This document shows positions 3-15,172 of a stretch of 64,000 nt of DNA, one piece after another. Within the stretch, counting starts at the first letter, position 1. Each line of letters begins with the position of its first letter. A program made the position numbers and the translations under genes. The notes beneath the pieces were generated by a model, which was not told the origin of the DNA, did not search any database, and was given only the letters and a program-made list of their open reading frames with translations. Location: positions 186,001 to 250,000 of the IMG/VR virus record IMGVR_UViG_3300032770_000001. One strand, 5' to 3'.

Positions 3-161
3 ACTAGAAACATCGTTGACGCCTGCCGACCATGCAATACTCTCAAGGGCTGCCTTACGCTAGAAGAATTTCGTCTCGTAATTGCGTTCCAAAAGGGTTT
101 GGTCAAACCTGCGAAGATGTTGTTCCCCGGCGAGCTTGCAAGAAAACTTGCGAACGATTGA
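3..161 (+). CDS. HNH endonuclease, C-terminal fragment (5' partial)
   Basis: Frame 3 reads TRNIVDACRPCNTLKGCLTLEEFR..., the NxVxACxxCNxxKG..TLEEF end of HNH nucleases; stop TGA 159-161. Not in the ORF track. Confidence 0.7.
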   Translation, partial: TRNIVDACRPCNTLKGCLTLEEFRLVIAFQKGLVKPAKMLFPGELARKLAND

Positions 162-212: not shown

Positions 213-500
213 GTGGGAATTCAGCAAGTCGTTCCTTTCAGCATCATTCTTGTCGGCGACGGAGTTACGACCACATTCAAATACACTCCAAGCCAACTCT
301 TCGCAGTCAACTTCGCAGGTCCGAATTACCGCACAATCTATAGTGCAGCAACTCCCAGTGCGGTGACCGCTATGAGCAGCACTCTCGGTCACGTGACGGC
401 ATCGCTTTCAAGCGGAAAGATTCAACTCATCTTCAGCACGCCGCCGCCAAATGGGTTGCAGGCTGAAGTTAACATCAATCTGTTCTTCGTAAGTCAGTAA
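213..500 (+). CDS. small putative virion protein, stand-alone IQQ/GDG domain
   Basis: GGAGG RBS before GTG; MGIQQV...GDGVTTTF is paralogous to the N-termini of 528, 894-2000 and 3473-6298. Confidence 0.7.
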   Translation: MGIQQVVPFSIILVGDGVTTTFKYTPSQLFAVNFAGPNYRTIYSAATPSAVTAMSSTLGHVTASLSSGKIQLIFSTPPPNGLQAEVNINLFFVSQ

Positions 501-527
501 AGATAAAAAGAAAGGTGCCCGACTCAC

Positions 528-893
528 ATGGCGATTTACATTCAGCAGAGCATTGAGCTTGGACTTTTTGGGGATGGTCTTGCTACGACCTTTTCCTATG
601 ATTTCAACAAAGCCCCGATTACTGCGGATTCAGACGGGGTTGCTTTAGCGGTAGGAAGCCCATCTTCACTCGGACCTGTGGTCTGGGTTGCCACGCCGCA
701 GGTTGGGATTGATGGACAGGGAAATGCCATCTACGATGAACCGAGCATCAATGCTCAGATCAACGGCACTATCGTGAGTTTTACTTTCGGTTCCGCTCTT
801 AAAGCTTACGGATCGATCTTCACGGATGGAAATAGCAATCCGTGGCAAATTGGGCCGTACATTCTCGACGTTGCGTTCAACTACAATGGGTAA
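528..893 (+). CDS. small putative virion protein, stand-alone IQQ/GDG domain
   Basis: AAAGGTG RBS; MAIYIQQ...GDGLATTFSY; beta-rich. Confidence 0.7.
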   Translation: MAIYIQQSIELGLFGDGLATTFSYDFNKAPITADSDGVALAVGSPSSLGPVVWVATPQVGIDGQGNAIYDEPSINAQINGTIVSFTFGSALKAYGSIFTDGNSNPWQIGPYILDVAFNYNG

Positions 894-2000
894 TTAGAAG
901 TTCGAAGTCTGCTTCACAGCGATAACTGTTATGTGCGTTGTGGTTGAGGCGCTCGTGGTTAACGTCCACGCTGTGTTCGCGGTCGTCGCCGGAAGCGGCG
1001 GATCGAAGTCCATGTTAAGGAACTGACATCCTACCGCAGCGTCAACGTTCATATCGAAGATGTATGACACTGTTCCATCGGAAAGCGTCATAGTCAAAGC
1101 CGCTGCCGTTGCTGAGGAAGCAACGGAGATATTCAAGTCCGTGATGTCAGCAAAAACTCCCGCGCCCTGCGCTGCCAGAATCGTTTTAGCGCCTGTGGTA
1201 GTGCTCGTAGTTGACTGCGTTACGATCTGACTGCGGCGGTACTCCTGCACAACTAGGTTGCCGTTGGGAGAACACTGGATCGGTGTTTGACTGCCGTTCG
1301 TGGGTGTGGGAGACGTGGTGCTGAACGTTGTCACCGCCCCGGCACTGACCAAACCGTTCGACGCAGTAGCCAAGCTGTTCATGCTGACAGCGGCCTGAGG
1401 ACTGGTTCCCGTGAGAACGCTGCTGAGACGTGCACGGAAATAGGAATACCCCGTAACCGTGAATGTGATGAGTGTGCTGCCTGCGGCAACTGCCCATGAG
1501 GAGATTGGTTGGAAGTTCGCCGGAATGGTGCCTGTAATTGTGAACCAATTCGTATTGTCCGGCGATGCTTCAAAGACAATGGCCCCGCCCGTGACTGTTC
1601 CACTCGCGATGATCGGCACTACTACGGTTCCTGATCCGCTGAGGGCGATACTGATCGTGGTGTTGGCAGCCGTTCCGCTAGTCCATGTCGCAGTCGCACC
1701 GGAGAGGCTGGCTGAACCATTGAAGAGCAGATCGCACCAGATCGAGATGACCTGACCGTTTGCGGGTGCGCTGTTGAACGTGATCGTCAGATTTCCGAAA
1801 CTATCAACGGTAGCTGTTGCGTTGATGGGGGAACTTCCATCATTGTGAAAACTTGCACCGGACGGCACTGTATTCATGTTCAGGAGAGTGCCGACCTGCG
1901 TACTCGCCTGCATGAGTTTGTTGATGCCGAACGTAAAGGCGGTGGAGGAGCCGTCGCCTTGAATGGCTAAATTGATTGTGACGATTTGCTGGATTGACAT
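894..2000 (-). CDS. Ser/Thr-rich fibre/decoration-like virion protein (368 aa)
   Basis: IQQ/GDG N-domain; FEASPDNTNW...YFRAR module shared with the larger fibres; AAGGGG RBS. Confidence 0.7.
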   Translation of the reverse strand: MSIQQIVTINLAIQGDGSSTAFTFGINKLMQASTQVGTLLNMNTVPSGASFHNDGSSPINATATVDSFGNLTITFNSAPANGQVISIWCDLLFNGSASLSGATATWTSGTAANTTISIALSGSGTVVVPIIASGTVTGGAIVFEASPDNTNWFTITGTIPANFQPISSWAVAAGSTLITFTVTGYSYFRARLSSVLTGTSPQAAVSMNSLATASNGLVSAGAVTTFSTTSPTPTNGSQTPIQCSPNGNLVVQEYRRSQIVTQSTTSTTTGAKTILAAQGAGVFADITDLNISVASSATAAALTMTLSDGTVSYIFDMNVDAAVGCQFLNMDFDPPLPATTANTAWTLTTSASTTTHITVIAVKQTSNF

Positions 2001-2197
2001 TGTACCGCCCCTTTATAAAGGGGACGGGTAGTCCGTCGATGGAACCAGCAATGCATGTGGGGACATCGGGGGAAGCAACCCACGTCGATTGAATGCCTTG
2101 GAAACCCCAACCAAAGAGTGATGTAGAACTCAAAGCGACAGCAAAGCGGTATACGGGGTTGTTGCGGTCGAAAGCTGCTAAGGACGCTCACGAGCTA

Positions 2198-3454
2198 TTA
2201 TAGCTTTTTTCGGGGCATGAAGTAATACCAAATTCTTCCGGCACCCTTGCGGTGTCCGGGCAACAGTTCTTCTACCGCCTGAGTGACACCGGGAAAGTGT
2301 GGGTGTTCATAGTCATGTCCGCAGAGAAGTCCGCCCGGTTTGAGCAATGGTTTCCACGCCTTGATGTCAGCTTTGACACCCTCGTAGTTGTGTCCGGCGT
2401 CGATGAATACCATGTCGAACTTCTTCTTTTGCGTCTTCAGCTTTTTTGCAGCTTTGACAGAGCGCATCTTCATGGGAGTAAGGTTCTTTACTCCCTTCAT
2501 ATTCTTCATGAAGATTTCGAAGATTTTTGAACGGTCGAGATCGTTAGGTAATTGAGTGTCGGGTTCGCTTTCAAAGGACGCTTTGAAAGTATCAACAGCG
2601 ATAACTTTTCCCGGCGTGTTGTCAGCCAATGCACGAGTGCTGCGTCCTAAAAATGAACCGATTTCCACGATGGCTTTGTGTTTTTTAGCCATCCGAGCTA
2701 ACCACAAGAGTTCATCCAGTTCCATCCAGCCCGTGATCTTTGCGGCTTTCATAATTCGTTCATCGACTGAAGGTTCCGGCCATGCCGCGAGATTCGCTCC
2801 CTGACATGGGTAAGAATCAAGGGGCAAGGTGAAGCACGAGCCATCAATGTTCATGTGAACTGGAAGAACCCCACCATGTGCCATGATCTTAAACCCAGCA
2901 TCGGAAACTTTCTTGCAAAAGTACAGGTCATCAGTACCAGTTGCGCGGGTGACTTCACCATCCACAAAAACTTCATCGGGTTCATAGAACCACGGTTCGG
3001 GAATCTTGTCGAGGATGCTGGTGCGGATGAGCATACACCCGGTACCGATTCCCGCACATTCAAACACTTCACCGATTTTCCAACGGTAGAACGGGCCGCC
3101 TCCGAGAGTCTTGAAAACGATAGGAGCCGGGGGGTCTTCCTTGGTGCAGTAAATTCCACCTATTACGCCAATGTTGGGGTCTTTTTCCATTTCCGCGTGT
3201 AGCCAACGGATGGCAAAAGCGGGGATGGCGGTGTCATCATCGAGACAAAGAATAAATTCAGCGCCTATTTTCTTGGCTTCGTGGGCAAGGAAATTGCGGT
3301 TTTCAGCACGATCCGTTCCCTCTTTAACAAGCCAAGCGACTGACATCCCAACGGGGTAGGCTAGTCCGGTCAGGCTAATCGCCCATCGAATGTTCACCGG
3401 ACGTTTAGACGAGGGTACACAGATTGCAAGACCAGCTTTTGTGGGAAGAGCCAT
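2198..3454 (-). CDS. glycosyltransferase (GT-A/GT2-like) fused to class I SAM methyltransferase
   Basis: N-half CLDDD, GTGCMLIR, TDDLYFC; C-half VEIGSFLGRST, FDMVFIDAGHNYEGV, GGLLCGHDY (Methyltransf_24-like). Confidence 0.85.
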   Translation of the reverse strand: MALPTKAGLAICVPSSKRPVNIRWAISLTGLAYPVGMSVAWLVKEGTDRAENRNFLAHEAKKIGAEFILCLDDDTAIPAFAIRWLHAEMEKDPNIGVIGGIYCTKEDPPAPIVFKTLGGGPFYRWKIGEVFECAGIGTGCMLIRTSILDKIPEPWFYEPDEVFVDGEVTRATGTDDLYFCKKVSDAGFKIMAHGGVLPVHMNIDGSCFTLPLDSYPCQGANLAAWPEPSVDERIMKAAKITGWMELDELLWLARMAKKHKAIVEIGSFLGRSTRALADNTPGKVIAVDTFKASFESEPDTQLPNDLDRSKIFEIFMKNMKGVKNLTPMKMRSVKAAKKLKTQKKKFDMVFIDAGHNYEGVKADIKAWKPLLKPGGLLCGHDYEHPHFPGVTQAVEELLPGHRKGAGRIWYYFMPRKKL

Positions 3455-3472
3455 ACACTGTGTAATACTCGA

Positions 3473-6298
3473 TTATTCAAAGAAGAACACAGCGCAAACG
3501 CCCGTACCGCCAGCCGTGGTGTTCGAGGTTGAAGTTGCGTTAACCACAACCGTAATACCATTGCTGAAGTTCGCCAAAGCGTAAGAACCGGGCGAAATGT
3601 TCATCTGAGCACTGGTAGACGCACTGGACGGTGCCGGAATCGGGACCGAAAACAACCAAGTACCAGTGGTCAAACCAGTGGTCGTGCTGGTATTGAAGAA
3701 GTGAATGAACAACGTACCTGCCGACGTTGATGTCGTTTGCAAGCTGATTGCCTGCACGCCATACAAGCTACCAGCCGAGTTCTTGATAACCGCAGATGCC
3801 GTGCTGTTGATGTACTTGGCTGTCAGTGAGCCTTGCGATACGGTTACCGGGGCGTGCGCCGTCCAAATGACGTTTGCCGGAGCCGCACCGGAGTTGACCG
3901 CAGCATCCACTGAAGCTCCAGCGTTGCCGCTGATGCCAACTTTCTGAACACCGGACGCAGCCGTGACTACGGTTGTTCCGTTCACCGATGCGAGGTCCTG
4001 ACGCAAACCACCGCCAGTCGTCAGCGACAGGGCGTTGAACGTGGTTGTGCTATATGCTGGAGCCGCCGTTGTTACCCAGCCGCCCATTTGTGCAATAGTT
4101 GGAGGCTGCACTGTAGCAGCAACCAGACCCGTGAAGATCAGCGTGGGATCGTGGATTTCGTTAGCACGCAGGGTGCAGCTTGCCGTACCGCTGGTGAAGG
4201 CTGAAACGCGAACACGGTAGTTGGACGCACCAGCCGCACCGATGATTGAGAAACTGGTAGCGGTGTTGGCAGAACCGAACACAATGCTGGGGACTTTGTT
4301 TCCAGTATCAAAGTACGTGCTTGTCCATGTGGTGCCGCCGTCAAACGAGACTTCCGGTACGATGGTGCCGATCAGTGTCCCAGCCGCCAAGAAACCGCCC
4401 ACAGCCAAATAGCCGAAAGCGTTGATGGTTGCTGCGGCGTTGAGGGCATTCAGGGTTCCTGTGCTACCGACCAGATCAGCCAACGCCCCAGCCGAAGCTG
4501 TGATAGTTCCCGAATCTACAACAACGTGCAGGTTGCTGCCCGTCGCTTGTACGACTGTCGCATTAAGGTTCGCCGCAGTCGCTTGAGTAACGGTGTTTGT
4601 CCATGTGCCGGACTGAGTCGCAGCGACCGTTCCGGTGACTGTTGCGTTCAGGTTCGCTGCCGTCGCCTGAGACACTGTGACTGCGTTGGTGATGGTGGTT
4701 AGGGTTCCGATGTTCCAAGTGCCGCTTTGCGTGACTGCTGCGGTACCGCTGACCGCAACCGTGAAGGTGTCAACGCCCGTCGCTACGATTTGTGCACCAC
4801 GAGCCGTCATCTGAGCATCGACGGTCTGTCCGTTCGTTACCGTGGGCTGCGTAGTATTGAATGCCCCGCCGATTTTGACAGGGTTCCCTGCGTTCGACGC
4901 ACCGGAGGCGGAATCGCCAACCACTGTGACGGGGTTGGTGACCGTGGTCAAGGTTCCGATGTTCCATGTTCCGGATTGGGCTGCCTGAACAGCAAACGTA
5001 CCAGTGCCCACTACGGTAGCGTTCAGGTTGGATGCGGTCGCCTGCGTGACAGTGTTCGTCCACGTGCCAGATTGGGTGGTTGCGACCGTGCCTGTAATCG
5101 TTGTTGAAGCGAGGGTAACAGCCTGCGCAGATGGGAAAATGACGTTGAGTTGTCCGCTGGAATTTGTAGACAAGCCTCGAACGTTAGTACCGTCGTAGCC
5201 GAGCGCAATGGTGCCGAGTGCGGATGAGGATTGGGCACTGCCCATTGCAAACTGTGATCCGCCGCCGAAAGATGTGATCTGGTTACCGCTGGCATCCACG
5301 ATAGCCGTTGCCATTGCCTTGGAGTTCGTGAGCGAGAAGCCTGTGACGCCGACAAGGTTTCCGGCGATGTTTACGCCCGTGTAGCTTGCGGAGGCTGGAA
5401 CCGCCGAGCCTGTCGCCGAGGCTGCGGCGTTGCCACTAGAACCCGCTTTTACATTGACCAGCAAGTTGCCTGCGGAGTCCAATTGAAGTGGTGAGGCGTT
5501 ACCGGAAGTAATGGTAGTTGGGGTCGTATTGAATTGAGCCCCGATCAGAATCGCGTTTGCTGGGGACGATGCATTCTGTCCCGCGAAATCAAGCACCGCA
5601 CCGCCATTGCCGACGATACGCGAAGTCCAGTTGCCAGACTGAGTTGCTGCTATTGTTCCCGTGACCGGGAAAGTCCCACCCGTACCTGTTACTAACCAAG
5701 CGGTCGTATTCGCTGTGTTTCCCGGCTGAACCGTCCATGTACCGCTTTGCGTTGCCTGAACCGCGAATGTGCCTGTCCCAACAACCGTAGCGTTCAGGTT
5801 GGCTGCGGTTCCCTGTGCAACCGTGAAAGACCCGGTTCCAGCGTTCGCAGTAACGGTGCCGGAGACGGGCTGGGTGACTGCTGATCCATCCACCTTGAGT
5901 GCACCACCCGCTGAAATGCTAGCTTTGTTGGTGCCGCCACTATCAAGAAGCTGTGTCGCAGAAGAACCCACGACCGTAACGTTTGTGGTTTGCGTCGGCG
6001 ATGAAGAGGTAGACGAGCCGGATGCAAATGTCAGATCAAGTTGGAACGTGTAGACGTTGGCAGGTAGTGGCGATGTTGTCGTAAGCGTGATATTGCCGTT
6101 CGCATCCGTCGTCACGGACGTGACAGGAACCGGGGGGTTATTGGCAGAGATAGCAGTCGGGACTACACCCGCTCCACCGAATGGCACAGCAATGCCGTTG
6201 CTGAACTGATAGAGGTTCTGCAAGGCGAAGCTAAACGTTGAAGCTGCACCGTCACCTTTGAGGTTCAAATAAACCGATATTACCTGTTGAATTGCCAT
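3473..6298 (-). CDS. long Thr/Ser/Ala/Gly-rich fibre-like virion protein (941 aa)
   Basis: IQQ/GDG N-domain, repeated QATAANLNATV and TQSGTW motifs, beta-sandwich-like C-terminus. Confidence 0.75.
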   Translation of the reverse strand: MAIQQVISVYLNLKGDGAASTFSFALQNLYQFSNGIAVPFGGAGVVPTAISANNPPVPVTSVTTDANGNITLTTTSPLPANVYTFQLDLTFASGSSTSSSPTQTTNVTVVGSSATQLLDSGGTNKASISAGGALKVDGSAVTQPVSGTVTANAGTGSFTVAQGTAANLNATVVGTGTFAVQATQSGTWTVQPGNTANTTAWLVTGTGGTFPVTGTIAATQSGNWTSRIVGNGGAVLDFAGQNASSPANAILIGAQFNTTPTTITSGNASPLQLDSAGNLLVNVKAGSSGNAAASATGSAVPASASYTGVNIAGNLVGVTGFSLTNSKAMATAIVDASGNQITSFGGGSQFAMGSAQSSSALGTIALGYDGTNVRGLSTNSSGQLNVIFPSAQAVTLASTTITGTVATTQSGTWTNTVTQATASNLNATVVGTGTFAVQAAQSGTWNIGTLTTVTNPVTVVGDSASGASNAGNPVKIGGAFNTTQPTVTNGQTVDAQMTARGAQIVATGVDTFTVAVSGTAAVTQSGTWNIGTLTTITNAVTVSQATAANLNATVTGTVAATQSGTWTNTVTQATAANLNATVVQATGSNLHVVVDSGTITASAGALADLVGSTGTLNALNAAATINAFGYLAVGGFLAAGTLIGTIVPEVSFDGGTTWTSTYFDTGNKVPSIVFGSANTATSFSIIGAAGASNYRVRVSAFTSGTASCTLRANEIHDPTLIFTGLVAATVQPPTIAQMGGWVTTAAPAYSTTTFNALSLTTGGGLRQDLASVNGTTVVTAASGVQKVGISGNAGASVDAAVNSGAAPANVIWTAHAPVTVSQGSLTAKYINSTASAVIKNSAGSLYGVQAISLQTTSTSAGTLFIHFFNTSTTTGLTTGTWLFSVPIPAPSSASTSAQMNISPGSYALANFSNGITVVVNATSTSNTTAGGTGVCAVFFFE

Positions 6299-6301: not shown

Positions 6302-6745
6302 TTATTTCCCGCTTGCCGCAGCCATCGAAACTTCTTTCCATTTACGAAGATAGTCAATGGCGCTTTGTAAAATTTCTAAGTTATCTACCGCAAAACCAAT
6401 CATCCTGTTGCATCTCCGGCAAAGAAGCTGCCGAATTCTGCCCGTAGCATGGTCATGATCCACGTTTGGGTCTAACATTGGATCGTTGCATATTGCACAG
6501 CGACCTTGCTGCTCAATTATCATGCGGTCGAACTCTCCGGACTCGAAAGCATATTTCCAGTTCTTGCTCATTGTGGCTTTACAAGCTTTGCAAGCGTTCT
6601 GTAGGCCATCCTTCATGTGGCGATTTCTGTTAAAATTCTCTTCCACAGAAAGCAGTCGTGTACATGAAGAGCATCTTTTTAGTCCATTAGCAGACTGTGC
6701 TTCGCCCCTTACGGCTCTTTTATCTGTTTGCTTATTTAGACTCAT
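6302..6745 (-). CDS. endonuclease VII-family HNH (probable free-standing homing endonuclease)
   Basis: CSSC...CKAC zinc motif, then QQGRCAIC, VDHDHATGRIRQLLCRRCN, AIDYL; ATG 6745 overlaps the upstream TGA. Confidence 0.85.
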   Translation of the reverse strand: MSLNKQTDKRAVRGEAQSANGLKRCSSCTRLLSVEENFNRNRHMKDGLQNACKACKATMSKNWKYAFESGEFDRMIIEQQGRCAICNDPMLDPNVDHDHATGRIRQLLCRRCNRMIGFAVDNLEILQSAIDYLRKWKEVSMAAASGK

Positions 6746-9700
6746 TCTTCCGTCCACTCCACCCAGCAATCCCCTACCGGGGTTGTGCCTACCGCGCTGA
6801 GGCGAATACCAGCAAATTCACCTGTACCGCGAAGCACCAATCCTTGCTCGTTGTTGTCTCCGAATTTCCATTCGATTTCACCCGGTTGAACGCTGACCGC
6901 AGCGGTGACAATTTCGAAGCGTTTGGAGTTCAAGATACCCGCTGAAGTCGCCGTTGTTGCTGCCGCCGACCACTGGTTGACCACAGCCGTCTGTGCTGCA
7001 TTGTTGGAGTCCAGTTTCGCAACGTTTGCAGCTTGTGAGTTCGGCGTGCCGCCCGTCAGAGCCGAATAACGAAGCAACTGGATATCGCAAATCGTACCAG
7101 TCGCAGCCGATGCACTGAAGACGATGCGCGTGATGCGGATTGTCTTAGTTGCACTTCCCGTAATAGAGACTGTGGGTGCAGTTGCCGAAGCAATTGGCGT
7201 GAAGGCAACAATACCTACGCGGTAAGTCTGCTTACGACCTTCTTGGTTGACGTACAGACCACCTGTCGAGTCCACCTGAATTGCCACTGTTTGTGCAGCG
7301 GTCGGGGCCGGGATGGTGGTGTTGTACTGACCCAAAATTGCGAGGGCGTTAGTTGGCGCTGTACCTGCCGCGACCGTCCCATCGAGTGTCGCACCCGCGT
7401 TTCCAACGATTCGAGAAGTCCAGTTGCCGGATTGCGCAGCTTGCACGGCGAAGGTTCCGGTGCCAACCACAGTCGCATTCAAGTTCGCAGCAGTTGCCTG
7501 CGAGACAGTGACGGCGTTCGTGATGCTCGTCAACGTGCCGCTGTCGAGCACAGTATGTAGGTTGGTTCCGGTCGCTTGAGCGACTGTAACGGTGCCCGTG
7601 ACGGCAGTTGTGCTGCCGGAGTCTGCGATGACGTGTAGTTGACCCGTGGTACTCGTCAAGAGCGCACGAAGGTTCGTACCATCCGTGCCGCCGATCATCA
7701 ATGCGTTGGCAGGAACCGCAGCGCCCGTGGCTCCATCAACTGCCACACCAGTATGACCTGCGATACCGACCAAAGCCTGACCAGCGGTCCCAGTCGTGGT
7801 GAGTGCTGTTGTGCCGATATAGAGCGAGGCGTTGACAGGCAATGAACCCGCAACTGCACCCGGCCCTGTGCCGAATGTGCCGGATGGAACTGATTGGGTT
7901 CCGACAAAGATTGAAGCATTGACACCCTGTACGCTGCCTGTGGGGGCGGAACCGAAAGTGCTCGGTACTGCCGTGAGTGCTGTACCAGCCACGGAAGTAT
8001 GGTCAGTACGAACTGCACCCACCGTATTGAATGAGAACGTGTTCTGCGTTGCCGTCACGTAGGTTGGGTTGGCGGTCGTGACTTGACCACCGACCTGAAT
8101 CATGTTGGCAGGCTGCGAGCCGCCGATAGCGGCATCGAGCACTGCTCCAGTGTTACCTACGATGCGGGTTGTCCAGTTACCACTCTGGGTGACCGCAGCG
8201 GTGCCCGTGACTGAAATTGGCAGCGGGTTGCTGCTTGATACTCCGACGAGATTCCCACTGGAGTTGAAGCCGACGTAATCGGCATAGCTGGGAACCGGAC
8301 TGCCTGTAGCTCCGTTAGAGGCGGCAGTAAATGTGCCGCTGACGGAATTGACGTTGACTTTAAGAATACCGTTAACGTCGGTCTGGAGAGGCACCATTGT
8401 GCCATCCGTATAGGTCGGCGGGGTGAGGTTGTATTCTGCTCCGATTGCCGTACCGATGCCGGGGAATGCTGAACCAAAGTTCGAGGATGTACCGCCGCTC
8501 GCACCCGTTGCAACGATCTTTAGGTTGCCGTTAACGTCGAACTGGAATGGCCCTGTCTGACCGTTGGTAAATGTTGGAGCAACGGTATTGTAGACACCAC
8601 CGACAATCGATGTGCTTGCAGGAGCCGTACCCGGCGTCGTGCCAGTCATGTCGGAAGCGTCTTTCGTATTGAAGGTGCCCGTCCCAGCGTTTGCCGTCAC
8701 AGTTCCGATGGCGTTTGAGCCTGCCGGAAGTGGCGTGTTCGGGCTGAGAGCAACGACCAAAGATGTGTCGGTTGTTTGTGCTGCTGTGGATACATCCTTG
8801 ACCGTGGCTTTGCGCCAATAGTATTGCCCATCCGAGATAGCTTGGTTATTGCGAGCCGTGTCACCGAGTCCGCAACCATCGACATGCAACTCTCCGGATG
8901 TGCCATTGGAGATGTTGATCGCGGTCATGTGCATCGTGCGATTGTTCGGCCCGAATGTCGCATTCGGTAAACTGGCTACGATGTTTTCCGCACGGTCGAT
9001 AGCCCAGAACGCGGTTCCCACATTCCACCACAAGTAGTAGATGTGGACATTCCCATCCATAGGCTGTACGTTAGTGCCGGAGGGAGAAAGGTCTGCAATT
9101 TGACTACGTGTAGTGCTGGTGCCGCTGTTACCGGAATACAAGACAGCGTACAGGTTACCGTCGATACCGATTTCCCAACCGATACCATCGAGAACAGGCG
9201 TTGTCAGCGTCGGTGTCGCGAGCGTGTTGCCCAGACCCCAGAAACGATAGCTGTTAGTGGTGATCGGGTTATCCAGCACAACCCCCCACGTCATGCGCAA
9301 ATGCGTTGGAGACAGGAGTGGGAAGAGTGCTTGACTTTGCAATAAGCTGTAACCATTGACGGTTGTTCCCGGTACAAGGCTGGTAAAGCGGATATCAATG
9401 CCGCCCGATGTCGGATTGCTGCCCCCACTGCCGGAGCCTACATTCCAACGGTTTGTGGTATCAAGCCCATTGCCGAAGAAGTCACTGAACAGTTGGCTAG
9501 CTTCTTGAGTAATGTTGAGTGCATTGAATGGAGAAACAGTTGCCGCAACGTCGTTAGTGCGGTACGGTCCGCTGAGTGAGAACGGCATCGGCTCATCGAA
9601 CGAATTGGTGACTTCAAGACGATCTACATCGTTGAACCAAATCCAATCAATCGATATGGTCGTGCTTCCGGATGGGATGCCCGTATTTTGAATGTAAGCA

Positions 9701-12081
9701 ACCGGGCTCATCTCCGTGTAAGGTGCAGGTAAATCGACAGAATTTGTGGCTACTACCGTATCGTCAATGGACAATTCAGCACGGTTGCCCGAAAGCCCAA
9801 TGCGGTACTTATGGTCACCGAGAAAATTTGCTCCTCCATCGAAGTTAAATGGGGTGGACTCGATCTCCGTGCCGTTAGCCGTTGTGATGAAATTACCAAC
9901 AGTCGGATCGGTTCCGGAGAATTGAATAACGGCCTGCTCCATTGCGCTCGAACCGAATTGATCTTGCAACCCAAACGTAATAATCTGATTGGCGATGGCT
10001 TGATCGATGTTCAAATAGAACTCAATCACTAACGGTAGATAGTCGGCAAGACCCGCGACGATACCCGTGGTTGCTCCGGAGGAAACGCCGGAAGAAATGT
10101 TGACGCTGGAAGTAGAGACAGTGATGCTGCCGCCCGAACCTGTCTGTGAAGCGAATAGACCCGCGACAGCGGTTGAAGGTGCTGTCGTACCCTGATATGG
10201 TGAGGCTAGCGTTAGCTGGGTATCGCTGATGACTTTAGCAACGACAACATAGTCGCTTTCCGGATCGGCGGATTTTTTGATCCAATAACCAATTTGGACT
10301 TCACTGGTAAAAGCTGTGCCGGAACCCGTAATGTTAGTGCTGCTATTGGTGAAGTTCACCGTTCCGGTCAACGTGGCGACGAGACTAGACCCATTGAAAT
10401 GGTCACGGAATGAACCCTCATCTGTGAAAACTGCCCCGCGAACAGCAAACTGACCTGCTGCGTCCACGACGGGTGGTACGATTTGACCAGTAGAATACTG
10501 AGCGCCCAGATTCGGGAAGAATCCACTTATCTGTGGCGTCTGTTCTGTGACAGTACCACTCACCACCCAAGGCGATGTTCCTTGGGTCGTCGTTACTGTT
10601 CCACTTACGGGAAGAGGAGTTTGATCGCTTGCAACGGTGACTGGCACAGAGGCAGACATTGTGGTCTGACCAAGGGCGATAGGAGTTCCGCCAATCTGCG
10701 CGATGTTCGTGCTCGCGTTATTGGGTGGGTTGACGGAAACTGCACCCCCAGCGGTGACTTTGACCGCTACATAGGAACTGCCGCCAGCCGTGTTGTGTCC
10801 GTAGAGTACCGACTGTGTGATCTGCGCGGTATCCGTGTCTTCCGGTGCCTGACCGAGGAAGTTGCGATTGATCTGTACAGCAATAGATTGCAGAATAGTC
10901 TGCACGCGGAACGCAGTTTGTGGCGTAGCTCCGTTCGTGTAGACGATTCTGAAGTATTGCGCTTGGCGTCCGAACGGTACGGAAATGGCATCGCCAGCGG
11001 AAACCGACACGCTGCTGATAATGTCCCAGTTCGTGCCATCTTCGGAGAACTGGAATTGAAGCCCGTTGACAGCCGAATCTTGATCGCTAAAAACTGATGT
11101 ACGAATGGAAGTGTACGGCAAGATATTCGTTGCTGTACCTGTGAACACCCCACCAGCACCGAGCGGGGTAGTAGTAGAATTGTTCGAGTCAACAACGCCG
11201 TCAGCCCCCACATCACCGCTGTCAACAATGACATGCTGCGGCGTAGCGAAAGCGACTGTCGGGGTGTTTTGAACGAGAACTTTAAGTTGTCCGGTACTGT
11301 CGGTACTGAACACGCGGAGGTTCGTACCGTCGCTTCCGCCTACTTGTAGAGCATTGACCGGAGCAAGCGAGCCGGGGGTTCCATTGGAAATGTCCTCCGT
11401 GGTGAACGTGCCTGTTCCGGCATTCGCTGTAATCGTACCGCTGACCACCCATGGGCTGGTGCTTTGGGTAACAGCCACAGTCGCCGGAAGCGCATCGACA
11501 GTGACATGAAGATTGGATGGGTCAAGCTGGAAAACCTCACTGATATTATTTGCCTGACCAGCTTCGAGAGTGATGGTTGCCGTGCCCGTCCAAGGTGCGG
11601 ACGTGCTGACGCGGAACATGTTCAACCCGCCAGCGTTGATCGCCCATTGACCGTTGGTGGTTGTGTTTGTGACTGCTGAACCTGTGGCGGGGAATCGCGG
11701 AAGAACGTAGGCCGGACTCCAGTTTGTGCCATCGACCGAAGCCTCAAAATTCAGGGTTCCAGTCCATGTGCCAACGACATTAAACAGAATCGTTCCCGCA
11801 CCTTGACCACTAATTGCGACATTCGATGGGCTGGCAGTGATGGTGCCTGTGACAATGCGGTCAGCGGAGGGGGCAGAAGATACAACTACGGGATGCGCAA
11901 TTGTGCCAATGACATTTGACCCATCCCACATCTGAAACTTGGCGGTGCCGTTCGTCAGGGTGGAATCCGAGGCAGGAGACACCACAGCACCAGTGATGTC
12001 GTATAGAGTAACGTGCGCTGCTTTGCTAATCGGATCAATTGTTAATTGATCTGTCGAATTGCCCGATTTAATTATTGCCAT
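6742..12081 (-). CDS. very long fibre-like virion protein (1779 aa)
   Basis: T/S/A/G-rich; FEASVDGTNW and FQFSEDGTNW modules; TGTVNFTNSSTNITGSGTAF tail-fibre-like segment; repeats shared with 3473-6298. Confidence 0.75.
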   Translation of the reverse strand: MAIIKSGNSTDQLTIDPISKAAHVTLYDITGAVVSPASDSTLTNGTAKFQMWDGSNVIGTIAHPVVVSSAPSADRIVTGTITASPSNVAISGQGAGTILFNVVGTWTGTLNFEASVDGTNWSPAYVLPRFPATGSAVTNTTTNGQWAINAGGLNMFRVSTSAPWTGTATITLEAGQANNISEVFQLDPSNLHVTVDALPATVAVTQSTSPWVVSGTITANAGTGTFTTEDISNGTPGSLAPVNALQVGGSDGTNLRVFSTDSTGQLKVLVQNTPTVAFATPQHVIVDSGDVGADGVVDSNNSTTTPLGAGGVFTGTATNILPYTSIRTSVFSDQDSAVNGLQFQFSEDGTNWDIISSVSVSAGDAISVPFGRQAQYFRIVYTNGATPQTAFRVQTILQSIAVQINRNFLGQAPEDTDTAQITQSVLYGHNTAGGSSYVAVKVTAGGAVSVNPPNNASTNIAQIGGTPIALGQTTMSASVPVTVASDQTPLPVSGTVTTTQGTSPWVVSGTVTEQTPQISGFFPNLGAQYSTGQIVPPVVDAAGQFAVRGAVFTDEGSFRDHFNGSSLVATLTGTVNFTNSSTNITGSGTAFTSEVQIGYWIKKSADPESDYVVVAKVISDTQLTLASPYQGTTAPSTAVAGLFASQTGSGGSITVSTSSVNISSGVSSGATTGIVAGLADYLPLVIEFYLNIDQAIANQIITFGLQDQFGSSAMEQAVIQFSGTDPTVGNFITTANGTEIESTPFNFDGGANFLGDHKYRIGLSGNRAELSIDDTVVATNSVDLPAPYTEMSPVAYIQNTGIPSGSTTISIDWIWFNDVDRLEVTNSFDEPMPFSLSGPYRTNDVAATVSPFNALNITQEASQLFSDFFGNGLDTTNRWNVGSGSGGSNPTSGGIDIRFTSLVPGTTVNGYSLLQSQALFPLLSPTHLRMTWGVVLDNPITTNSYRFWGLGNTLATPTLTTPVLDGIGWEIGIDGNLYAVLYSGNSGTSTTRSQIADLSPSGTNVQPMDGNVHIYYLWWNVGTAFWAIDRAENIVASLPNATFGPNNRTMHMTAINISNGTSGELHVDGCGLGDTARNNQAISDGQYYWRKATVKDVSTAAQTTDTSLVVALSPNTPLPAGSNAIGTVTANAGTGTFNTKDASDMTGTTPGTAPASTSIVGGVYNTVAPTFTNGQTGPFQFDVNGNLKIVATGASGGTSSNFGSAFPGIGTAIGAEYNLTPPTYTDGTMVPLQTDVNGILKVNVNSVSGTFTAASNGATGSPVPSYADYVGFNSSGNLVGVSSSNPLPISVTGTAAVTQSGNWTTRIVGNTGAVLDAAIGGSQPANMIQVGGQVTTANPTYVTATQNTFSFNTVGAVRTDHTSVAGTALTAVPSTFGSAPTGSVQGVNASIFVGTQSVPSGTFGTGPGAVAGSLPVNASLYIGTTALTTTGTAGQALVGIAGHTGVAVDGATGAAVPANALMIGGTDGTNLRALLTSTTGQLHVIADSGSTTAVTGTVTVAQATGTNLHTVLDSGTLTSITNAVTVSQATAANLNATVVGTGTFAVQAAQSGNWTSRIVGNAGATLDGTVAAGTAPTNALAILGQYNTTIPAPTAAQTVAIQVDSTGGLYVNQEGRKQTYRVGIVAFTPIASATAPTVSITGSATKTIRITRIVFSASAATGTICDIQLLRYSALTGGTPNSQAANVAKLDSNNAAQTAVVNQWSAAATTATSAGILNSKRFEIVTAAVSVQPGEIEWKFGDNNEQGLVLRGTGEFAGIRLSAVGTTPVGDCWVEWTEE

Positions 12082-12084
12082 AGG

Positions 12085-12504
12085 TTATCCCACGATGTAG
12101 TTGAGCATGAACTTGTCGGACACGTACCCTTCCAAGCCAATCGCATATACCTCGAATTGTCCCGTTGAGCACTGACCGAACTTCAAATCGATTGCGTCCA
12201 TCTCGAACTCATCTAAATCCTTACCCGTCGTCCCCACGTCATAGGCAATCTGCCCAGTGATGTGGGAGCCCGGTGATACAGCCGGATCAGAAATCATAAA
12301 AAGCATTTCACTCACAGGCAGTGTGCCGAAATCAATCTGCACCTGTGTGACTTTATTCCCCGAACTCGGCAGCAACGACGGATCGATGGTGCCGCTCGGT
12401 GTCGTACTGACGATTACCTCAGACGCGGGTCCAGTTTCGGTCGCGATAACCTCTTGTACTTGCCCCGATACTGGATCACGTTCTAAATATTTCGGTGCTG
12501 CCAT
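12085..12504 (-). CDS. putative virion protein, MAAPKYLERD family
   Basis: First ~46 aa nearly identical to those of 12508-13008. Confidence 0.7.
   Translation of the reverse strand: MAAPKYLERDPVSGQVQEVIATETGPASEVIVSTTPSGTIDPSLLPSSGNKVTQVQIDFGTLPVSEMLFMISDPAVSPGSHITGQIAYDVGTTGKDLDEFEMDAIDLKFGQCSTGQFEVYAIGLEGYVSDKFMLNYIVG
12476..12504 (-). repeat. duplicated gene start (other copy at 12980-13008)
   Basis: TCACGTTCTAAATATTTCGG(T/G)GCTGCCAT, 28 of 29 nt identical. Confidence 0.85.
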
Positions 12505-12507
12505 CGT

Positions 12508-13008
12508 TTAACTCGCGAGGATAATCCCGTCCTCAATGTTCACATCTATTGCCGTTGTGCTTGTTGATGTACCGAGCAACTGAGCGATAACACCCACACC
12601 TGTCGGAACCACAGCCGTCACACCACCCGGCGTTGCTTTGTCGCCATAGTAGCGCGTACCCGCCGTCAAGCCAGTGAGTGATGTGTTCTGTCCACCGCTG
12701 TAATAGGTCGCCGTTGCCGCACTGCTGTAGCTGTTCAAAACGTAACCGATAGCCTGATTTCCACCCGACGACCAGACGGCGTTGTAGAGCTTGCCATCTG
12801 AAGCCTTGATGTATACGAAGGCTCCCGCCGCCAAGCTCTCGCCAGCAGTGGCGGTCGCCGCGCCAGATGCGGGAAGCAGGCTTGGGTCAATCGTTCCACC
12901 CGCAGTAGTTGAGACGACCACTTCTGCCGCAGGACCGACCTCAGTTGCGATGACTTCTGTGACTTTGCCACTCGTGGCGTCACGTTCTAAATATTTCGGG
13001 GCTGCCAT
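12508..13008 (-). CDS. putative virion decoration/cement-like protein, MAAPKYLERD family
   Basis: TAGESLAAGAFVYI...AIGYV...GLTAGTRYY resembles DUF2190/capsid-cement-like modules. Confidence 0.65.
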   Translation of the reverse strand: MAAPKYLERDATSGKVTEVIATEVGPAAEVVVSTTAGGTIDPSLLPASGAATATAGESLAAGAFVYIKASDGKLYNAVWSSGGNQAIGYVLNSYSSAATATYYSGGQNTSLTGLTAGTRYYGDKATPGGVTAVVPTGVGVIAQLLGTSTSTTAIDVNIEDGIILAS

Positions 13009-13020
13009 GATCTATTTCCT

Positions 13021-13581
13021 TTATGAGAGGACAATCGGTAGACCGATTTGAACCTCTATCTGAGTGTTTGAAAGCACAGTTCCAATTGGCAGTTCAAAAG
13101 CTGCCGCTGGAGACTGCGGGACTGTTGTCGTCATTGATCCCCCGGTGCTCAAATAAAGCGTCTGTCCCGGCGTTGTCCAATTCCAACCGAGGTTCGACAA
13201 AAAGCCCAACTGCTGTACCTGAACCGGGTCACCGGGGTTGACTGCACTCGTGATCGCAATCCCGATGGTTTGAGATGTATCCTGTAAATCCGTGACATCT
13301 GCCAAATAAGCGCCTCCATCAGAATGAACGCTGACCACCTGAAAAGCGTTAATCACTTCCTCTGCGGTCAAAGTTGTGACGATAGCCGAGGACGTAGTGC
13401 CGGGAATCAGGCTTGGATCAAGCTGTCCGGTGTTGGTGGTTATCGGAATCGCCCCCGGTGTGCCGCCTTGCTGGACGACAGGTACGCGCCACTCGGTGCG
13501 TCCTTTCTGACCGGGTTTGTCCTTGCGATCAACTACGACAGAAACGTCAAGGGCGTCCAGAATGGGGTTCTCGGTGCTCAT
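13021..13581 (-). CDS. putative virion decoration/cement-like protein
   Basis: Start re-called at ATG 13581 (TAATG overlap); GQLDPSLIP and TAEEVINAFQVV...IGIAI...GQTLYL parallel 12508-13008. Confidence 0.65.
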   Translation of the reverse strand: MSTENPILDALDVSVVVDRKDKPGQKGRTEWRVPVVQQGGTPGAIPITTNTGQLDPSLIPGTTSSAIVTTLTAEEVINAFQVVSVHSDGGAYLADVTDLQDTSQTIGIAITSAVNPGDPVQVQQLGFLSNLGWNWTTPGQTLYLSTGGSMTTTVPQSPAAAFELPIGTVLSNTQIEVQIGLPIVLS

Positions 13582-14090
13582 TAGTAGAACAATGCCTCCA
13601 TGTCGTATACAAACAGGGCGGCAGCCGTCCCGGTAAGGGTCTGTGGGGTCTGCGAAGTTCCGATGTTGGTCTCGGCGTAGTACAGCCACACCTTACGATC
13701 CCCGGCGTCGAGTGCCTGCGCTCCGGCAGGTTCGGCTGTCGGACCGTAGTCGGCGGTGGTGAATGGGAAAGTGATCGTGACTGAGTCCTGTACCGTGGCA
13801 TTCACGACTACCCGGTTGAGAAAATCCGCGTTCGTGAGCCCGGTCAGGATGATGCGTTGAGTCTTCCGCATGTTGCTGGTGGAATCGACCGTCAGCGTGA
13901 CGACGTTGCTGAGTACCGTTACGCTCTGGATGTTGCCGAGAATAACTTCCGGGTTCGATTCGATCTTTTGAAGCGAATTGATCTCGATAAACTGTTCTTT
14001 TTCTTGTGGTTGTGTGGCAGGATCGGGTTTGTAAATCCAGAAAGCCGCGTGAATGGTCGTATTTGCTTGGAAACCAGTTGTGATTGCCAT
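13581..14090 (-). CDS. putative structural protein with small beta-barrel (FCCH-like) module
   Basis: Start re-called at ATG 14090 behind GGAGAG; NVVTLTV...IILTGLTNADFLN...TITF. Confidence 0.6.
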   Translation of the reverse strand: MAITTGFQANTTIHAAFWIYKPDPATQPQEKEQFIEINSLQKIESNPEVILGNIQSVTVLSNVVTLTVDSTSNMRKTQRIILTGLTNADFLNRVVVNATVQDSVTITFPFTTADYGPTAEPAGAQALDAGDRKVWLYYAETNIGTSQTPQTLTGTAAALFVYDMEALFY

Positions 14091-14278
14091 GGGCTCTCCG
14101 AATTGGGCACACGTCGCCGTAGCAACGAAAACGTGCCTGTCCACAGCCTTGTGATTGGGGCTGCGGCTCTAACTAAAGGATCGAAAGTCGGATCAGGCTT
14201 TCACTCGTTTTCTCGTCTTCACCGAGCGGTGAAAGTCCATAAAGTGGTGAAAATAAAGACAAAAAACCCCTAAAATTC

Positions 14279-14309: not shown

Positions 14310-14315
14310 GTAGGT

Positions 14316-15163: not shown

Positions 15164-15172
15164 GGGAATTCT

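What the first reader, a model, noticed from the sequence alone, without database searches (positions are those of the whole stretch)
2198..3454. Glycosyltransferase-methyltransferase fusion embedded among Ser/Thr-rich virion fibres
Seen: a GT-A domain (DDD motif) fused to a SAM methyltransferase, lying between genes for extremely Thr/Ser-rich proteins and preceded by its own AGTATT motif. Established: some actinobacteriophages glycosylate virion proteins with their own glycosyltransferases, and chlorovirus PBCV-1 has a multidomain GT/methyltransferase that builds methylated capsid glycans. Inference: this phage coats its fibres with O-methylated glycan, for shielding or adhesion.
Basis: partly seen in the sequence, partly recalled or inferred. 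Interest (0 to 1): 0.65.

Follow-up and report, generated by a model that had tools for sequence, protein, structure and literature searches.

The report
Phage sugar-adding, sugar-methylating fusion enzyme
A 455-kb wetland phage encodes one protein that joins a sugar-transferring domain to a sugar-methylating-type domain, placed between its most serine/threonine-rich fibre-like genes. It has the same two-domain build as an enzyme of mycobacteriophage Che8, a phage whose particles are known to be glycosylated, so it probably decorates the phage's own surface proteins, though this is not proven.

Summary
Window 2198-3454 (-) is one 418-aa ORF.

- **N-terminal domain (res 1-225):** a GT-A glycosyltransferase. 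The model has pLDDT 91-94 and matches STIV A197 at Z 20. D72 and D74 of the DDD motif are invariant in 57 homologues.
- **C-terminal domain (res 241-418):** a Methyltransf_24 SAM methyltransferase (Pfam E 2e-18). Its nearest solved relative is MeT1, a sugar O-methyltransferase.
- **Neighbours:** the two flanking genes rank 1st and 3rd of 507 ORFs in the genome for Ser+Thr content.
- **Family:** I found it in phage and metagenome sequence only. The GT domain occurs alone, fused to Methyltransf_24 at four separate places in its tree, fused to an unrelated methyltransferase family, or next to a separate TylF-type methyltransferase gene.
- **Gene linkage:** each GT lineage keeps its own Ser/Thr-rich partner gene beside it. 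In the window's lineage the partner is a fibre C-terminal domain, directly upstream in 5 of 5 genomes.
- **Precedent:** Che8 gp108 has the same GT2 + Methyltransf_24 build, and Che8 virions are glycosylated.

Best reading (confidence 0.55): a cytoplasmic enzyme that adds a sugar to virion surface proteins and O-methylates it. No glycan, no acceptor and no virion location has been shown. I file it as a new member of a known kind, of moderate interest.

The parts
2198..3454 (-). Whole ORF, 418 aa plus stop: bifunctional GT-A / SAM methyltransferase
2780..3454 (-). GT-A glycosyltransferase domain (residues 1-225), A197-like
   Evidence: Z 20.0 to 2c0n; Foldseek E 6e-11; standalone homologues of about 235 aa cover only this part
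3233..3241 (-). DDD (DxD) metal/nucleotide-sugar motif, residues 72-74
   Evidence: Invariant columns in A1 and A2
2927..2929 (-). Asp176 in TDDLYF, an invariant candidate catalytic base. His200 (2855-2857) is an invariant candidate third metal ligand
   Evidence: Invariant in A1/A2. The roles are inferred from GT-A enzymology and were not tested
2201..2734 (-). Methyltransf_24 (MeT1/TylF-like) SAM methyltransferase domain, residues 241-418. Motif I is VEIGSFLGRST (263-273); D352/H355 and H380-D381 align with the MeT1 FIDGGH...HD segment
   Evidence: Pfam E 7e-19; MeT1 6g7d profile E 3.4e-11 and Foldseek E 8e-12; alignment
3463..3469 (-). AGTATT / GTATTA motif, 8-9 nt before the ATG, inside the 18-nt gap after the fibre gene's stop codon
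3473..6298 (-). 941-aa Ser/Thr/Gly/Ala-rich fibre-like protein directly upstream: the proposed main acceptor
   Evidence: S+T 27.3%, rank 3 of 507; no Pfam, PHROG or NCBIfam family; nearest Atlas feature clusters are 81-94% viral
3476..4021 (-). C-terminal domain of the 941-aa protein (residues ~760-941) with the conserved FFNT[ST]xTT and ALANFS.GI motifs. This part travels with the GT gene
   Evidence: Found only in the ORF that ends at the GT start in L009, L010, L011, L025 and the window
894..2000 (-). 368-aa protein directly downstream, the most Ser/Thr-rich ORF of the genome: a second candidate acceptor
   Evidence: S+T 28.8%, rank 1 of 507; shares the N-terminal motif with the 941-aa protein
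6742..12081 (-). 1779-aa fibre-like protein, modular paralogue of the 941-aa protein
   Evidence: Shared 61-108-nt repeat modules; shared peptide motifs with L009's fibre; S+T 23.6%
213..893 (+). Two small ORFs (95 and 121 aa) with the same N-terminal motif as the 368- and 941-aa proteins
   Evidence: The motif is found in only these four ORFs of the 455.7-kb genome

Best explanation
The gene encodes a soluble, cytoplasmic, two-domain enzyme. I propose three steps. (1) The N-terminal GT-A domain is DxD- and metal-dependent. Its fold is GT2-like, with an invariant Asp176 that could act as catalytic base, so it is probably inverting. It takes a host nucleotide-sugar and transfers the sugar to exposed Ser/Thr-rich segments of the phage's own surface proteins before or during assembly. 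The first candidate is the C-terminal domain of the 941-aa fibre-like protein encoded just upstream. The 368-aa and 1779-aa neighbours are further candidates. (2) The C-terminal MeT1/TylF-like, probably metal-dependent SAM methyltransferase O-methylates that sugar, either on the protein or, as CalS11 does, on the nucleotide-sugar before transfer. This caps it. (3) The result would be fibres carrying short methylated glycans. Shown here: the two folds, the conserved motifs, restriction of the close family to phage and metagenome sequence, repeated GT-methyltransferase coupling, and conserved adjacency to Ser/Thr-rich partner genes. Inferred: the acceptor, the donor, the methylated atom, the order of the two reactions, and the biological purpose (shielding from antibodies, lectins or proteases, or adhesion).
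For: Folds and motifs. No membrane segment: the highest 19-residue hydropathy is 1.52.

The GT and methyltransferase functions have been joined repeatedly:
- Methyltransf_24 fusions sit at 4 separate places in the GT tree.
- A clade of fusions carries the unrelated Methyltransf_11/25/23 type.
- In L010 a separate TylF gene lies directly downstream of the GT; in L024 a methyltransferase gene lies directly upstream.

Position in the genome: the gene lies between ORFs ranked 1 and 3 of 507 for Ser+Thr.

Conserved partners:
- The 941-aa protein's C-terminal domain is directly upstream of the GT in 5 of 5 genomes of this lineage, at 42-62% GT identity.
- Lineage B keeps a ~300-aa family next to the GT. 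That family's profile matches a capsid-shell chain of Legionella phage LME-1 (9eg4), E 6e-14.
- Lineage D keeps a 152-197-aa family with a PHROG 'tail fiber' hit.
- 31 of 42 non-identical loci have a protein with at least 20% Ser+Thr within two genes of the GT, against 20.9 +/- 3.0 for random positions.

Distant homologues sit inside structural modules, for example MCP - hypothetical - GT - tail tubular A - tail fiber in MW202711, and beside terminase, major head and Mu-F genes.

Precedent: Che8 gp108 is GT2 + Methyltransf_24/TylF. hhalign gives E 1.5e-4 over both domains and BFVD Foldseek gives E 1.3e-11. Che8, Corndog and Myrna virions are glycosylated (PMC12363180). Cluster O phages pair an O-methyltransferase gene with three GT genes that modify capsid and tail tube (PMC11600133).

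The close family has 135 relatives in IMG/VR and none in 185,579 species genomes by the same pattern scan.
Against: - No glycan, glycoprotein or virion proteome exists for this uncultivated phage.
- The 'fibre' identity of the neighbours rests on composition, size, repeats and weak Atlas neighbours only.
- Gene adjacency in a late or structural module shows co-expression, not an enzyme-substrate relation.
- The nearest GT relative, L009, has no methyltransferase within 10 kb.
- In Che8 the essential GT is gp110 (GT25-like), not the fusion (PMC12363180). No second, initiating GT lies in this module, so this enzyme would have to start the glycan itself.
- The phage encodes no nucleotide-sugar pathway.
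- The N-x-S/T sequon count is what composition predicts, so it says nothing about the site type.
- The complex prediction could not be run.
Confidence: 0.55

Rival explanations
1. The enzyme alters a host envelope polymer (LPS, teichoic acid, capsule or S-layer glycan) during infection, as prophage TarP does for wall teichoic acid. This could block superinfection or ease release. Its position among fibre genes would then reflect only late co-expression.
For: TarP, TarS, SpsA, RmlT and polysaccharide synthases appear among the GT-A fold matches at Z 14-15. In L010 the GT heads a cluster of GT2, GT6, GT6, GT11, an epimerase and a C-methyltransferase, which would also suit polysaccharide synthesis. 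Elsewhere in this genome a GT-A gene is paired with a polysaccharide pyruvyl transferase. Cyanophage papers read similar gene sets as cell-surface modification (PMC12801897).
Against: There is no membrane segment, and no Gtr-like or flippase partner. The best fold match by a clear margin is the viral soluble minimal GT-A A197 (Z 20 against 15). The close family was absent from cellular genomes in the pattern scan. Lineage-specific adjacency to particular virion-type protein genes is not expected for an enzyme that acts on host polymers.
Confidence: 0.15
2. The enzyme works on a soluble or non-virion substrate. It might make a methylated nucleotide-sugar or small glycoside, or modify another phage or host cytoplasmic protein. 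Alternatively the methyltransferase domain could methylate protein rather than sugar.
For: CalS11 and TylF-type relatives act on nucleotide-sugars or natural-product sugars. COMT-like small-molecule O-methyltransferases fill the fold list. Host-dependent methylation of phage tail proteins has been reported (PMC13445384, title and abstract only). The acceptor was never observed here.
Against: Repeated physical fusion to a GT argues that both domains act on one glycoconjugate. No natural-product genes lie nearby. Partner-gene conservation points to proteins of the particle.
Confidence: 0.2
3. The enzyme glycosylates, and then methylates, hypermodified bases in the phage DNA to evade restriction.
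For: PHROG 2675, the best PHROG for the C-terminal domain, is labelled 'DNA methyltransferase'. There is a trivial Pfam TAGT hit around the DxD motif (E 0.16). Phage GTs that hypermodify DNA are well known (cited in PMC12619734).
Against: The methyltransferase belongs to the O-methyltransferase-like Methyltransf_24 family, with MeT1 as its nearest solved relative. It is not a DNA N6, N4 or C5 methyltransferase family. The TAGT score is far below its cut-off (12.3 against 27.5 bits). The only thymidylate-synthase-like gene in the window is ThyX, 58 kb away. The gene sits among fibre-like genes, not replication genes. Relatives sit in head and tail modules.
Confidence: 0.04

Closest known systems
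Mycobacteriophage Che8 gp108, with gp109 and gp110: the virion glycosylation genes studied by Freeman et al. 2023, as cited in PMC12363180 and PMC11600133
   Same: Same two-domain order: N-terminal GT2-type GT-A and C-terminal Methyltransf_24/TylF methyltransferase in one ~400-aa protein. Remote homology runs across both domains: hhalign E 1.5e-4 over 297 columns and BFVD Foldseek E 1.3e-11. Both are phage-encoded and soluble.
   Different: Profile-level similarity only (22% over aligned columns). In Che8 the fusion is one of three tandem GT genes at the right genome end, and the GT reported as essential is gp110 (PMC12363180). The known targets are the C-termini of capsid and tail-tube subunits (PMC12619734). 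Here the fusion is the only GT in its module, lies between fibre-like genes, and belongs to a 455-kb wetland phage.
Chlorovirus PBCV-1 A064R, a multidomain GT / GT / methyltransferase for the capsid glycan. Its function is recalled from my own knowledge and was not checked here
   Same: A virus-encoded fusion of GT-A domain(s) with a sugar methyltransferase that acts on the virus's own structural protein. Two unnamed chlorovirus proteins (M1IF74, 638 aa; M1HWA2, 445 aa) align over about 500 columns, E 5e-10 to 3e-9.
   Different: A064R has three domains and belongs to a eukaryotic virus. I could not confirm that the BFVD hits are A064R orthologues. The A064R domain-1 crystal structure was not among the top 50 fold matches.
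STIV A197 (PDB 2c0n), the minimal viral GT-A
   Same: Best structural match of the GT domain: Z 20.0, rmsd 2.4 A over 173 of 191 residues. It has a DxD motif. It is essential in STIV, whose major capsid protein is glycosylated, and the capsid protein is the suspected acceptor (PMC10551542).
   Different: 14-17% identity. A197 is from an archaeal virus, has no methyltransferase domain, and its donor and acceptor are also unknown (PMC10551542).
Mycobacterium hassiacum MeT1 (PDB 6g7d), the methylmannose-polysaccharide 1-O-methyltransferase
   Same: Nearest solved relative of the C-terminal domain: profile E 3.4e-11, Foldseek E 8e-12, TM 0.71 by target. The VEIG..G.ST and FID.GH...HD segments are shared. 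MeT1 methylates a sugar hydroxyl (PMC9883506).
   Different: About 22% identity. MeT1 is a standalone bacterial enzyme for a cytoplasmic polysaccharide. Regiospecificity cannot be transferred.
Cluster O mycobacteriophages (Corndog group): an O-methyltransferase gene followed by three GT genes
   Same: A phage cassette that pairs O-methyltransferase with GT activities to modify virion proteins (PMC11600133).
   Different: The genes are separate. I made no sequence comparison with those proteins. tblastn of the window protein against 50,697 phage records found only one mycobacteriophage hit, a lone methyltransferase in phage Boilgate.

Membership tests
GT-A fold glycosyltransferases (GT2-like clan) | Single Rossmann-like alpha/beta/alpha nucleotide-sugar-binding domain | tested here: met
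   AF2 pLDDT 91-94. Z 20.0 to A197, and 109 representative chains at Z 8 or more; all but a few of the 50 listed are GT-A enzymes
GT-A fold glycosyltransferases (GT2-like clan) | DxD motif at the end of the fourth beta-strand | tested here: met
   LDDDT at residues 71-75; D72 and D74 invariant in 57 sequences, D72-D74 in 59
GT-A fold glycosyltransferases (GT2-like clan) | Pfam Glycos_transf_2 score above the gathering cut-off | tested here: not met
   16.2 bits against 23.3. Some family members pass (PF00535 or PF13641 listed), and the MT11-type fusions score 20-22 bits. The family is a divergent branch; membership rests on fold
GT-A fold glycosyltransferases (GT2-like clan) | Catalytic base and sugar-transfer activity | not testable with these tools
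   Asp176 and His200 are invariant candidates; no assay was possible
Methyltransf_24 / TylF-like class I SAM O-methyltransferases | Pfam PF13578 above the gathering cut-off | tested here: met
   67.7-69.1 bits against 26.3
Methyltransf_24 / TylF-like class I SAM O-methyltransferases | Gly-rich SAM motif I and acidic motif II | tested here: met
   VEIGSFLGRST (263-273) and IAVD (285-288) are conserved in A1 and align with the same segments of MeT1
Methyltransf_24 / TylF-like class I SAM O-methyltransferases | Metal-binding Asp/His cluster, and a sugar hydroxyl as substrate | tested here: inconclusive
   D352, H355 and H380-D381 align with FIDGGH...HD of MeT1. The ligand roles are recalled, not checked, because the MeT1 structure paper is not held. 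The substrate is untested
Phage virion glycosylation systems (Che8 / Corndog / Myrna type) | Phage-encoded GT with an associated O-methyltransferase | tested here: met
   Both domains are in one ORF. Che8 gp108 has the same architecture
Phage virion glycosylation systems (Che8 / Corndog / Myrna type) | Glycans demonstrably attached to virion proteins | not testable with these tools
   This is an uncultivated wetland metagenome phage, and no listed run is on record as RNA. Only gene linkage is available
Phage virion glycosylation systems (Che8 / Corndog / Myrna type) | Presence of the essential initiating GT (Che8 gp110 / Corndog gp38 type, GT25-like) | tested here: not met
   No second GT lies in the module. 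The only other GT-A genes lie 177-192 kb away and are GT2 or GT7C-like. No GT25 search was run, so the rest of the genome was not tested for that family
DNA base glycosyltransferases (TAGT and T4-type) | Family profile match, and linkage to a base hydroxymethylation or TET pathway | tested here: not met
   TAGT gives 12.3 bits against 27.5. The neighbours are fibre-like genes. The only thymidylate-synthase-like gene in the window is ThyX
Seroconversion Gtr-type / membrane GT2 synthases | Transmembrane segments or membrane partner genes | tested here: not met
   The highest 19-residue Kyte-Doolittle mean is 1.52. The model is globular throughout

The most novel reading that the evidence does not exclude
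The A197-like GT family is a phage-restricted 'surface-protein glycosylation cassette'. Each GT lineage has co-diversified with its own acceptor gene: a fibre knob, a head-decoration-like protein or a short tail-fibre-like protein. It picks up and drops methyltransferase domains of different families as tailoring modules. If so, methylated-glycan coats on fibres and heads would be common in uncultivated environmental phages, up to 455-kb megaphages, and not peculiar to actinobacteriophages. The adjacent gene would then predict the acceptor.
Probability: 0.35. Interest if true: 0.7.

Novelty: new member of a known kind. Interest (0 to 1): 0.42.

Why it matters
In the literature I could reach, phage virion glycosylation has been shown only for a few mycobacteriophages, where it weakens antibody recognition. 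If this family does the same job, three things follow.

- It extends virion glycosylation to very large environmental phages and to fibre proteins, which are the parts that meet the host.
- It gives a simple genomic rule, GT next to its Ser/Thr-rich partner, for picking enzyme-acceptor pairs to test.
- It shows that Che8 gp108, annotated only as 'glycosyltransferase', also carries a methyltransferase domain.

The enzyme is small and soluble and its model is confident, so the test is practical. As it stands, this is an annotation-level inference about a common enzyme class.

Tried and rejected
**Steps that could not be run**
Nothing can be said about binding.
- The ESM Atlas fold library was not available.
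- The Freeman 2023 and MeT1 structure papers are not held. Their content is cited only through other papers or marked as recalled.

**Searches that found nothing**
- No near-identical phage in 50,697 records.
- tblastn of the 941-aa protein: no hit. The 1779-aa protein gave only two short hits.
- Pfam sheath and terminase models found nothing in the genome, so I could not place the module relative to the head and tail genes.
- PDB profile searches of the fibre C-terminal domain (A4) and the 322-aa partner family (A5) gave nothing usable.
- NCBIfam added nothing.
- The sigma-70 promoter and terminator scan found nothing on the coding strand.

**Ideas dropped**
- That the ~300-aa partner families are cut-down versions of the 941-aa C-terminal region. 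This was suggested by Atlas feature neighbours, but hhalign finds no relation between A3, A4 and A5.
- N-glycosylation sequon enrichment in the fibres: counts equal the composition expectation.
- The PHROG label 'DNA methyltransferase' for the C-terminal domain. I reject it as a family-name artefact, given Pfam and MeT1.

**Left unresolved**
- Whether 9eg4 'orf16' is the LME-1 major capsid protein or its head decoration protein. Decoration is more likely, because the phages concerned have a separate predicted major head protein.
- No RNA run holds the stretch.
Full report
**What is there.** The window is bases 186001-250000 of a single 455,708-bp IMG/VR virus contig that CheckV rates complete. 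Near-identical sequence is held by wetland metagenome runs. The window carries phage-type genes: polynucleotide kinase, RNA ligase, CCA-adding enzyme, topoisomerase, helicase and ThyX. No close relative exists among 50,697 deposited phage records. On the minus strand, 14112 to 894 forms a run of co-oriented genes:
- four small genes;
- a 1779-aa protein (6742-12081);
- an Endonuclease VII/HNH gene (6302-6769);
- a 941-aa protein (3473-6298);
- the target ORF (2198-3454, 418 aa);
- a 368-aa protein (894-2000).

**The observation.** The C-terminal half is a clear Methyltransf_24 domain (E 1.9e-18, 67.7 bits against a 26.3 cut-off). By sequence the N-terminal half only grazes Glycos_transf_2 (E 0.01, below cut-off) and finds nothing in the PDB by phmmer. 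I therefore built alignments from 328 homologues and predicted the structure.
- The full-length model has pLDDT 93.6 and the N-domain model 91.2.
- The N-domain is a GT-A fold. VIA-align gives Z 20.0, rmsd 2.4 A over 173 residues to the Sulfolobus virus STIV glycosyltransferase A197. That is well clear of the next matches at Z about 15: mimivirus R699, B4GALNT1, WrtF, chlorovirus hyaluronan synthase, Mnn9, TarP and SpsA. Foldseek agrees.
- The DDD at residues 72-74 is the DxD motif. D72, D74, W125, P154-W155-F156, D176, H200 and P216 are invariant in 57 sequences.
- For the methyltransferase domain, the best solved relative by profile (E 3.4e-11) and by fold (E 8e-12) is MeT1. MeT1 is the 1-O-methyltransferase of mycobacterial methylmannose polysaccharide (PMC9883506). 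Next come cation-dependent O-methyltransferases and CalS11, a TDP-rhamnose 3'-O-methyltransferase.
- The protein has no membrane segment.

The flanking proteins are Ser/Thr-rich beyond anything else in the genome. The 368-aa and 941-aa proteins rank 1st and 3rd of 507 ORFs (28.8% and 27.3%, against a mean of 12.6%, sd 4.6). The 1779-aa protein has 23.6%. AGTATT sits 9 nt before the ATG.

**The family.** Homologues come in two forms: fused proteins of about 400 aa and GT-only proteins of about 235 aa. An IMG/VR scan found 135 relatives, of which 80 loci were fetched. The same kind of pattern scan found none in one genome each of 185,579 bacterial and archaeal species. That scan is pattern-limited, so it argues only that the close family is phage-borne.

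The GT and a methyltransferase have been brought together in several ways:
- **Methyltransf_24 fusions** like the window's (L012/13, L035, L036, L050).
- **Methyltransf_11/25/23 fusions**, an unrelated methyltransferase family joined to the same GT (L029-L031, L039, L042, L045, L049).
- **A Methyltransf_12/23 fusion** in L086.
- **Separate genes**: a TylF/Methyltransf_24 gene directly after the GT in a 265-kb phage (L010), and a methyltransferase gene directly before it in L024.

On a maximum-likelihood tree of 40 GT domains, the Methyltransf_24 fusion needs four changes, forced by well-supported branches. The Methyltransf_11-type fusion forms essentially one clade. The window's nearest GT (L009, 62% identical, support 96/91) has no methyltransferase within 10 kb. 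So the GT is the core, and methylation is a recurrent, optional tailoring step on whatever the GT makes. This is the strongest evidence that both domains act on one glycoconjugate.

**Gene linkage.** The last ~180 residues of the 941-aa protein form a domain with conserved FFNT[ST]xTT and ALANFS.GI motifs. An iterated profile search of 6,900 ORFs from all loci found this domain in exactly four other proteins. In L009, L010, L011 and L025 it lies in the ORF that ends at the start of the GT gene, as it does in the window. The 1779-aa protein gave a weak hit (E 9e-5).

Other GT lineages keep other partners:
- A ~300-aa family (20-22% Ser+Thr) lies 0-1 genes upstream in eight loci. Its profile matches chain 'orf16' of the Legionella phage LME-1 capsid model 9eg4 (E 6e-14). 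That model holds the major capsid protein and an outward-projecting head decoration protein (PMC12407071). These phages have a separate predicted major head protein, so the decoration protein is the likelier match. I could not confirm the chain's identity.
- A ~322-aa family lies beside the GT in four loci, three of them with a second GT between.
- A 152-197-aa family (phrog_5417, with a phrog_4176 'tail fiber protein' hit) lies upstream of the Methyltransf_11-type fusions.

The three larger families are not detectably related to one another. Overall, 31 of 42 non-identical loci have a protein with at least 20% Ser+Thr within two genes of the GT, against 20.9 +/- 3.0 for random positions in the same loci (1 of 2000 permutations reached 31). 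The loci are not phylogenetically independent, so this figure is only indicative. More distant homologues sit inside head and tail modules. One example is portal - scaffold - major capsid - hypothetical - GT - tail tubular A - tail fiber in MW202711. Others lie beside terminase, Mu-F and tail genes.

**Comparison with known systems.** A BFVD search showed viral proteins that align over both domains, including Mycobacterium phage Che8 'glycosyltransferase' Q855A2 (E 1.3e-11). I fetched Che8. Its genes 108-110 are three tandem glycosyltransferases. gp108 (391 aa) is GT2 (residues 31-132) plus Methyltransf_24/TylF (243-366). hhalign against the family profile gives E 1.5e-4 over 297 columns spanning both domains. 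Che8, Corndog and Myrna virions carry glycans, with Che8 gp110 and Corndog gp38 reported as the essential GTs (PMC12363180, citing Freeman et al. 2023). Cluster O phages pair an O-methyltransferase gene with three GT genes that modify capsid and tail tube (PMC11600133). A197 is essential in STIV, whose major capsid protein is glycosylated (PMC10551542). The window's enzyme is therefore a remote member of a domain architecture already present in a phage with proven virion glycosylation, not a new invention. It differs in three ways: it is the only GT in its module, it sits between fibre-like genes, and it belongs to a megaphage from a wetland.

**Mechanism and rivals.** My best reading (0.55) is given under Best explanation. 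The enzyme would use a host NDP-sugar, since the phage has no epimerase, nucleotidyltransferase or GT1 genes. It would glycosylate Ser/Thr-rich surface segments of the neighbouring proteins, and its second domain would O-methylate the sugar.

The rivals are:
- host envelope polymer modification (0.15);
- another soluble or protein substrate (0.2);
- DNA hypermodification (0.04).

The DNA reading rests mainly on a PHROG label that Pfam and MeT1 contradict.

The weak points of the favoured reading are plain. No glycan has been seen. 'Fibre' is an inference from size, composition, shared repeat modules, a shared N-terminal motif and viral Atlas neighbours. Adjacency shows co-regulation rather than enzyme and substrate. 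In Che8 the fusion-type enzyme is not the one reported as essential.

**Verdict.** I file it as a new member of a known kind with interest 0.42. No alternative genetic code was used.

Noticed in passing
whole genome; in the window e.g. 3463-3468(-), 21327(+), 56512(+), 61077(+), 63133(+): GTATTA occurs 101 times in the 455.7-kb genome. In 40 cases a start codon opening at least 50 codons follows within 3-15 nt, mostly at 6-8 nt, and often as GTATTA-N5-6-(T)ATG. AGTATT occurs 29 times in the window against 13.4 +/- 3.8 in shuffles. The spacing would fit a -10-like element driving leaderless or very short-leader mRNAs. Other genes have Shine-Dalgarno-like TAGGAG/AGGAGA instead.
   Followed up: partly
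window 213-500(+), 528-893(+), 894-2000(-), 3473-6298(-): Four ORFs begin with the same ~25-residue motif (M.IQQ ... GDG..T.F.[FY]). No other ORF of the genome has it. It may be a common attachment module for several fibres. Two of the four are only 95 and 121 aa, and they converge on the 368-aa gene with stop codons abutting at 893/894.
   Followed up: partly
window 6302-6769(-) and 3-161(+): An Endonuclease VII/HNH gene (Pfam E 1e-19) is wedged between the two large fibre genes and overlaps the last 28 nt of the 1779-aa ORF. Another HNH fragment runs off the window start. These are probably homing endonucleases. L002 and L009 also carry Endo VII/NUMOD3 genes near their GT.
   Followed up: no
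window 2008-2023(-): A perfect 16-nt palindrome, CCCCTTTATAAAGGGG, ends 7 nt before the ATG of the 368-aa gene, in the 197-nt gap after the GT-methyltransferase gene. It could be an operator, a stem-loop or a TATAAA-type late promoter.
   Followed up: no
genome C1:366955-368615(-) and C1:379948-380676(-) (loci L005, L004): There are two more GT-A genes elsewhere in the genome. One (GT2/GT7C-like, 299 aa) abuts a polysaccharide pyruvyl transferase (254 aa). The other (GT2, 242 aa) is next to a metallophosphoesterase. They could extend or tailor the same glycan, or serve another target.
   Followed up: partly
L010 (IMGVR_UViG_3300050821_009835, 265 kb), locus 10001-20789: In this relative the GT is followed by a TylF methyltransferase, a GT2, two GT6, a GT11, later an epimerase/dehydratase-like gene and a sugar C-methyltransferase-like gene, all downstream of two fibre-like genes. 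GT6 plus GT11 is the enzyme pair behind histo-blood-group-type glycans.
   Followed up: no
L095 36172-37347 (Che8 gene 108, AAN12506.1): Che8 gp108 is deposited simply as 'glycosyltransferase'. Pfam also finds a Methyltransf_24/TylF domain at residues 243-366, so it is a bifunctional GT-methyltransferase.
   Followed up: yes
window 26578-32605(+): This is an RNA repair set: polynucleotide kinase (394 aa), RNA ligase (389 aa) and tRNA nucleotidyltransferase (443 aa). It is presumably a counter to host anticodon nucleases.
   Followed up: no
window 4963-5070, 5734-5841, 7419-7526 and others: The 941-aa and 1779-aa genes share diverged 61-108-nt repeat modules (68-74% identity). The peptide motifs GN.GA.LDAA.G..PAN.L.VGG.DGTN and TQSGTWT recur, also in L009's fibre. 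These look like modular, recombining fibres.
   Followed up: partly
L013 8891-9799 and relatives (alignment A3): A ~300-aa phage protein family with no PHROG or Pfam match is homologous, over its C-terminal 160 residues, to chain 'orf16' of the Legionella phage LME-1 capsid model 9eg4 (E 6e-14). The LME-1 paper states that its novel head decoration protein has a C-terminal domain with relatives in uncharacterised phages.
   Followed up: partly
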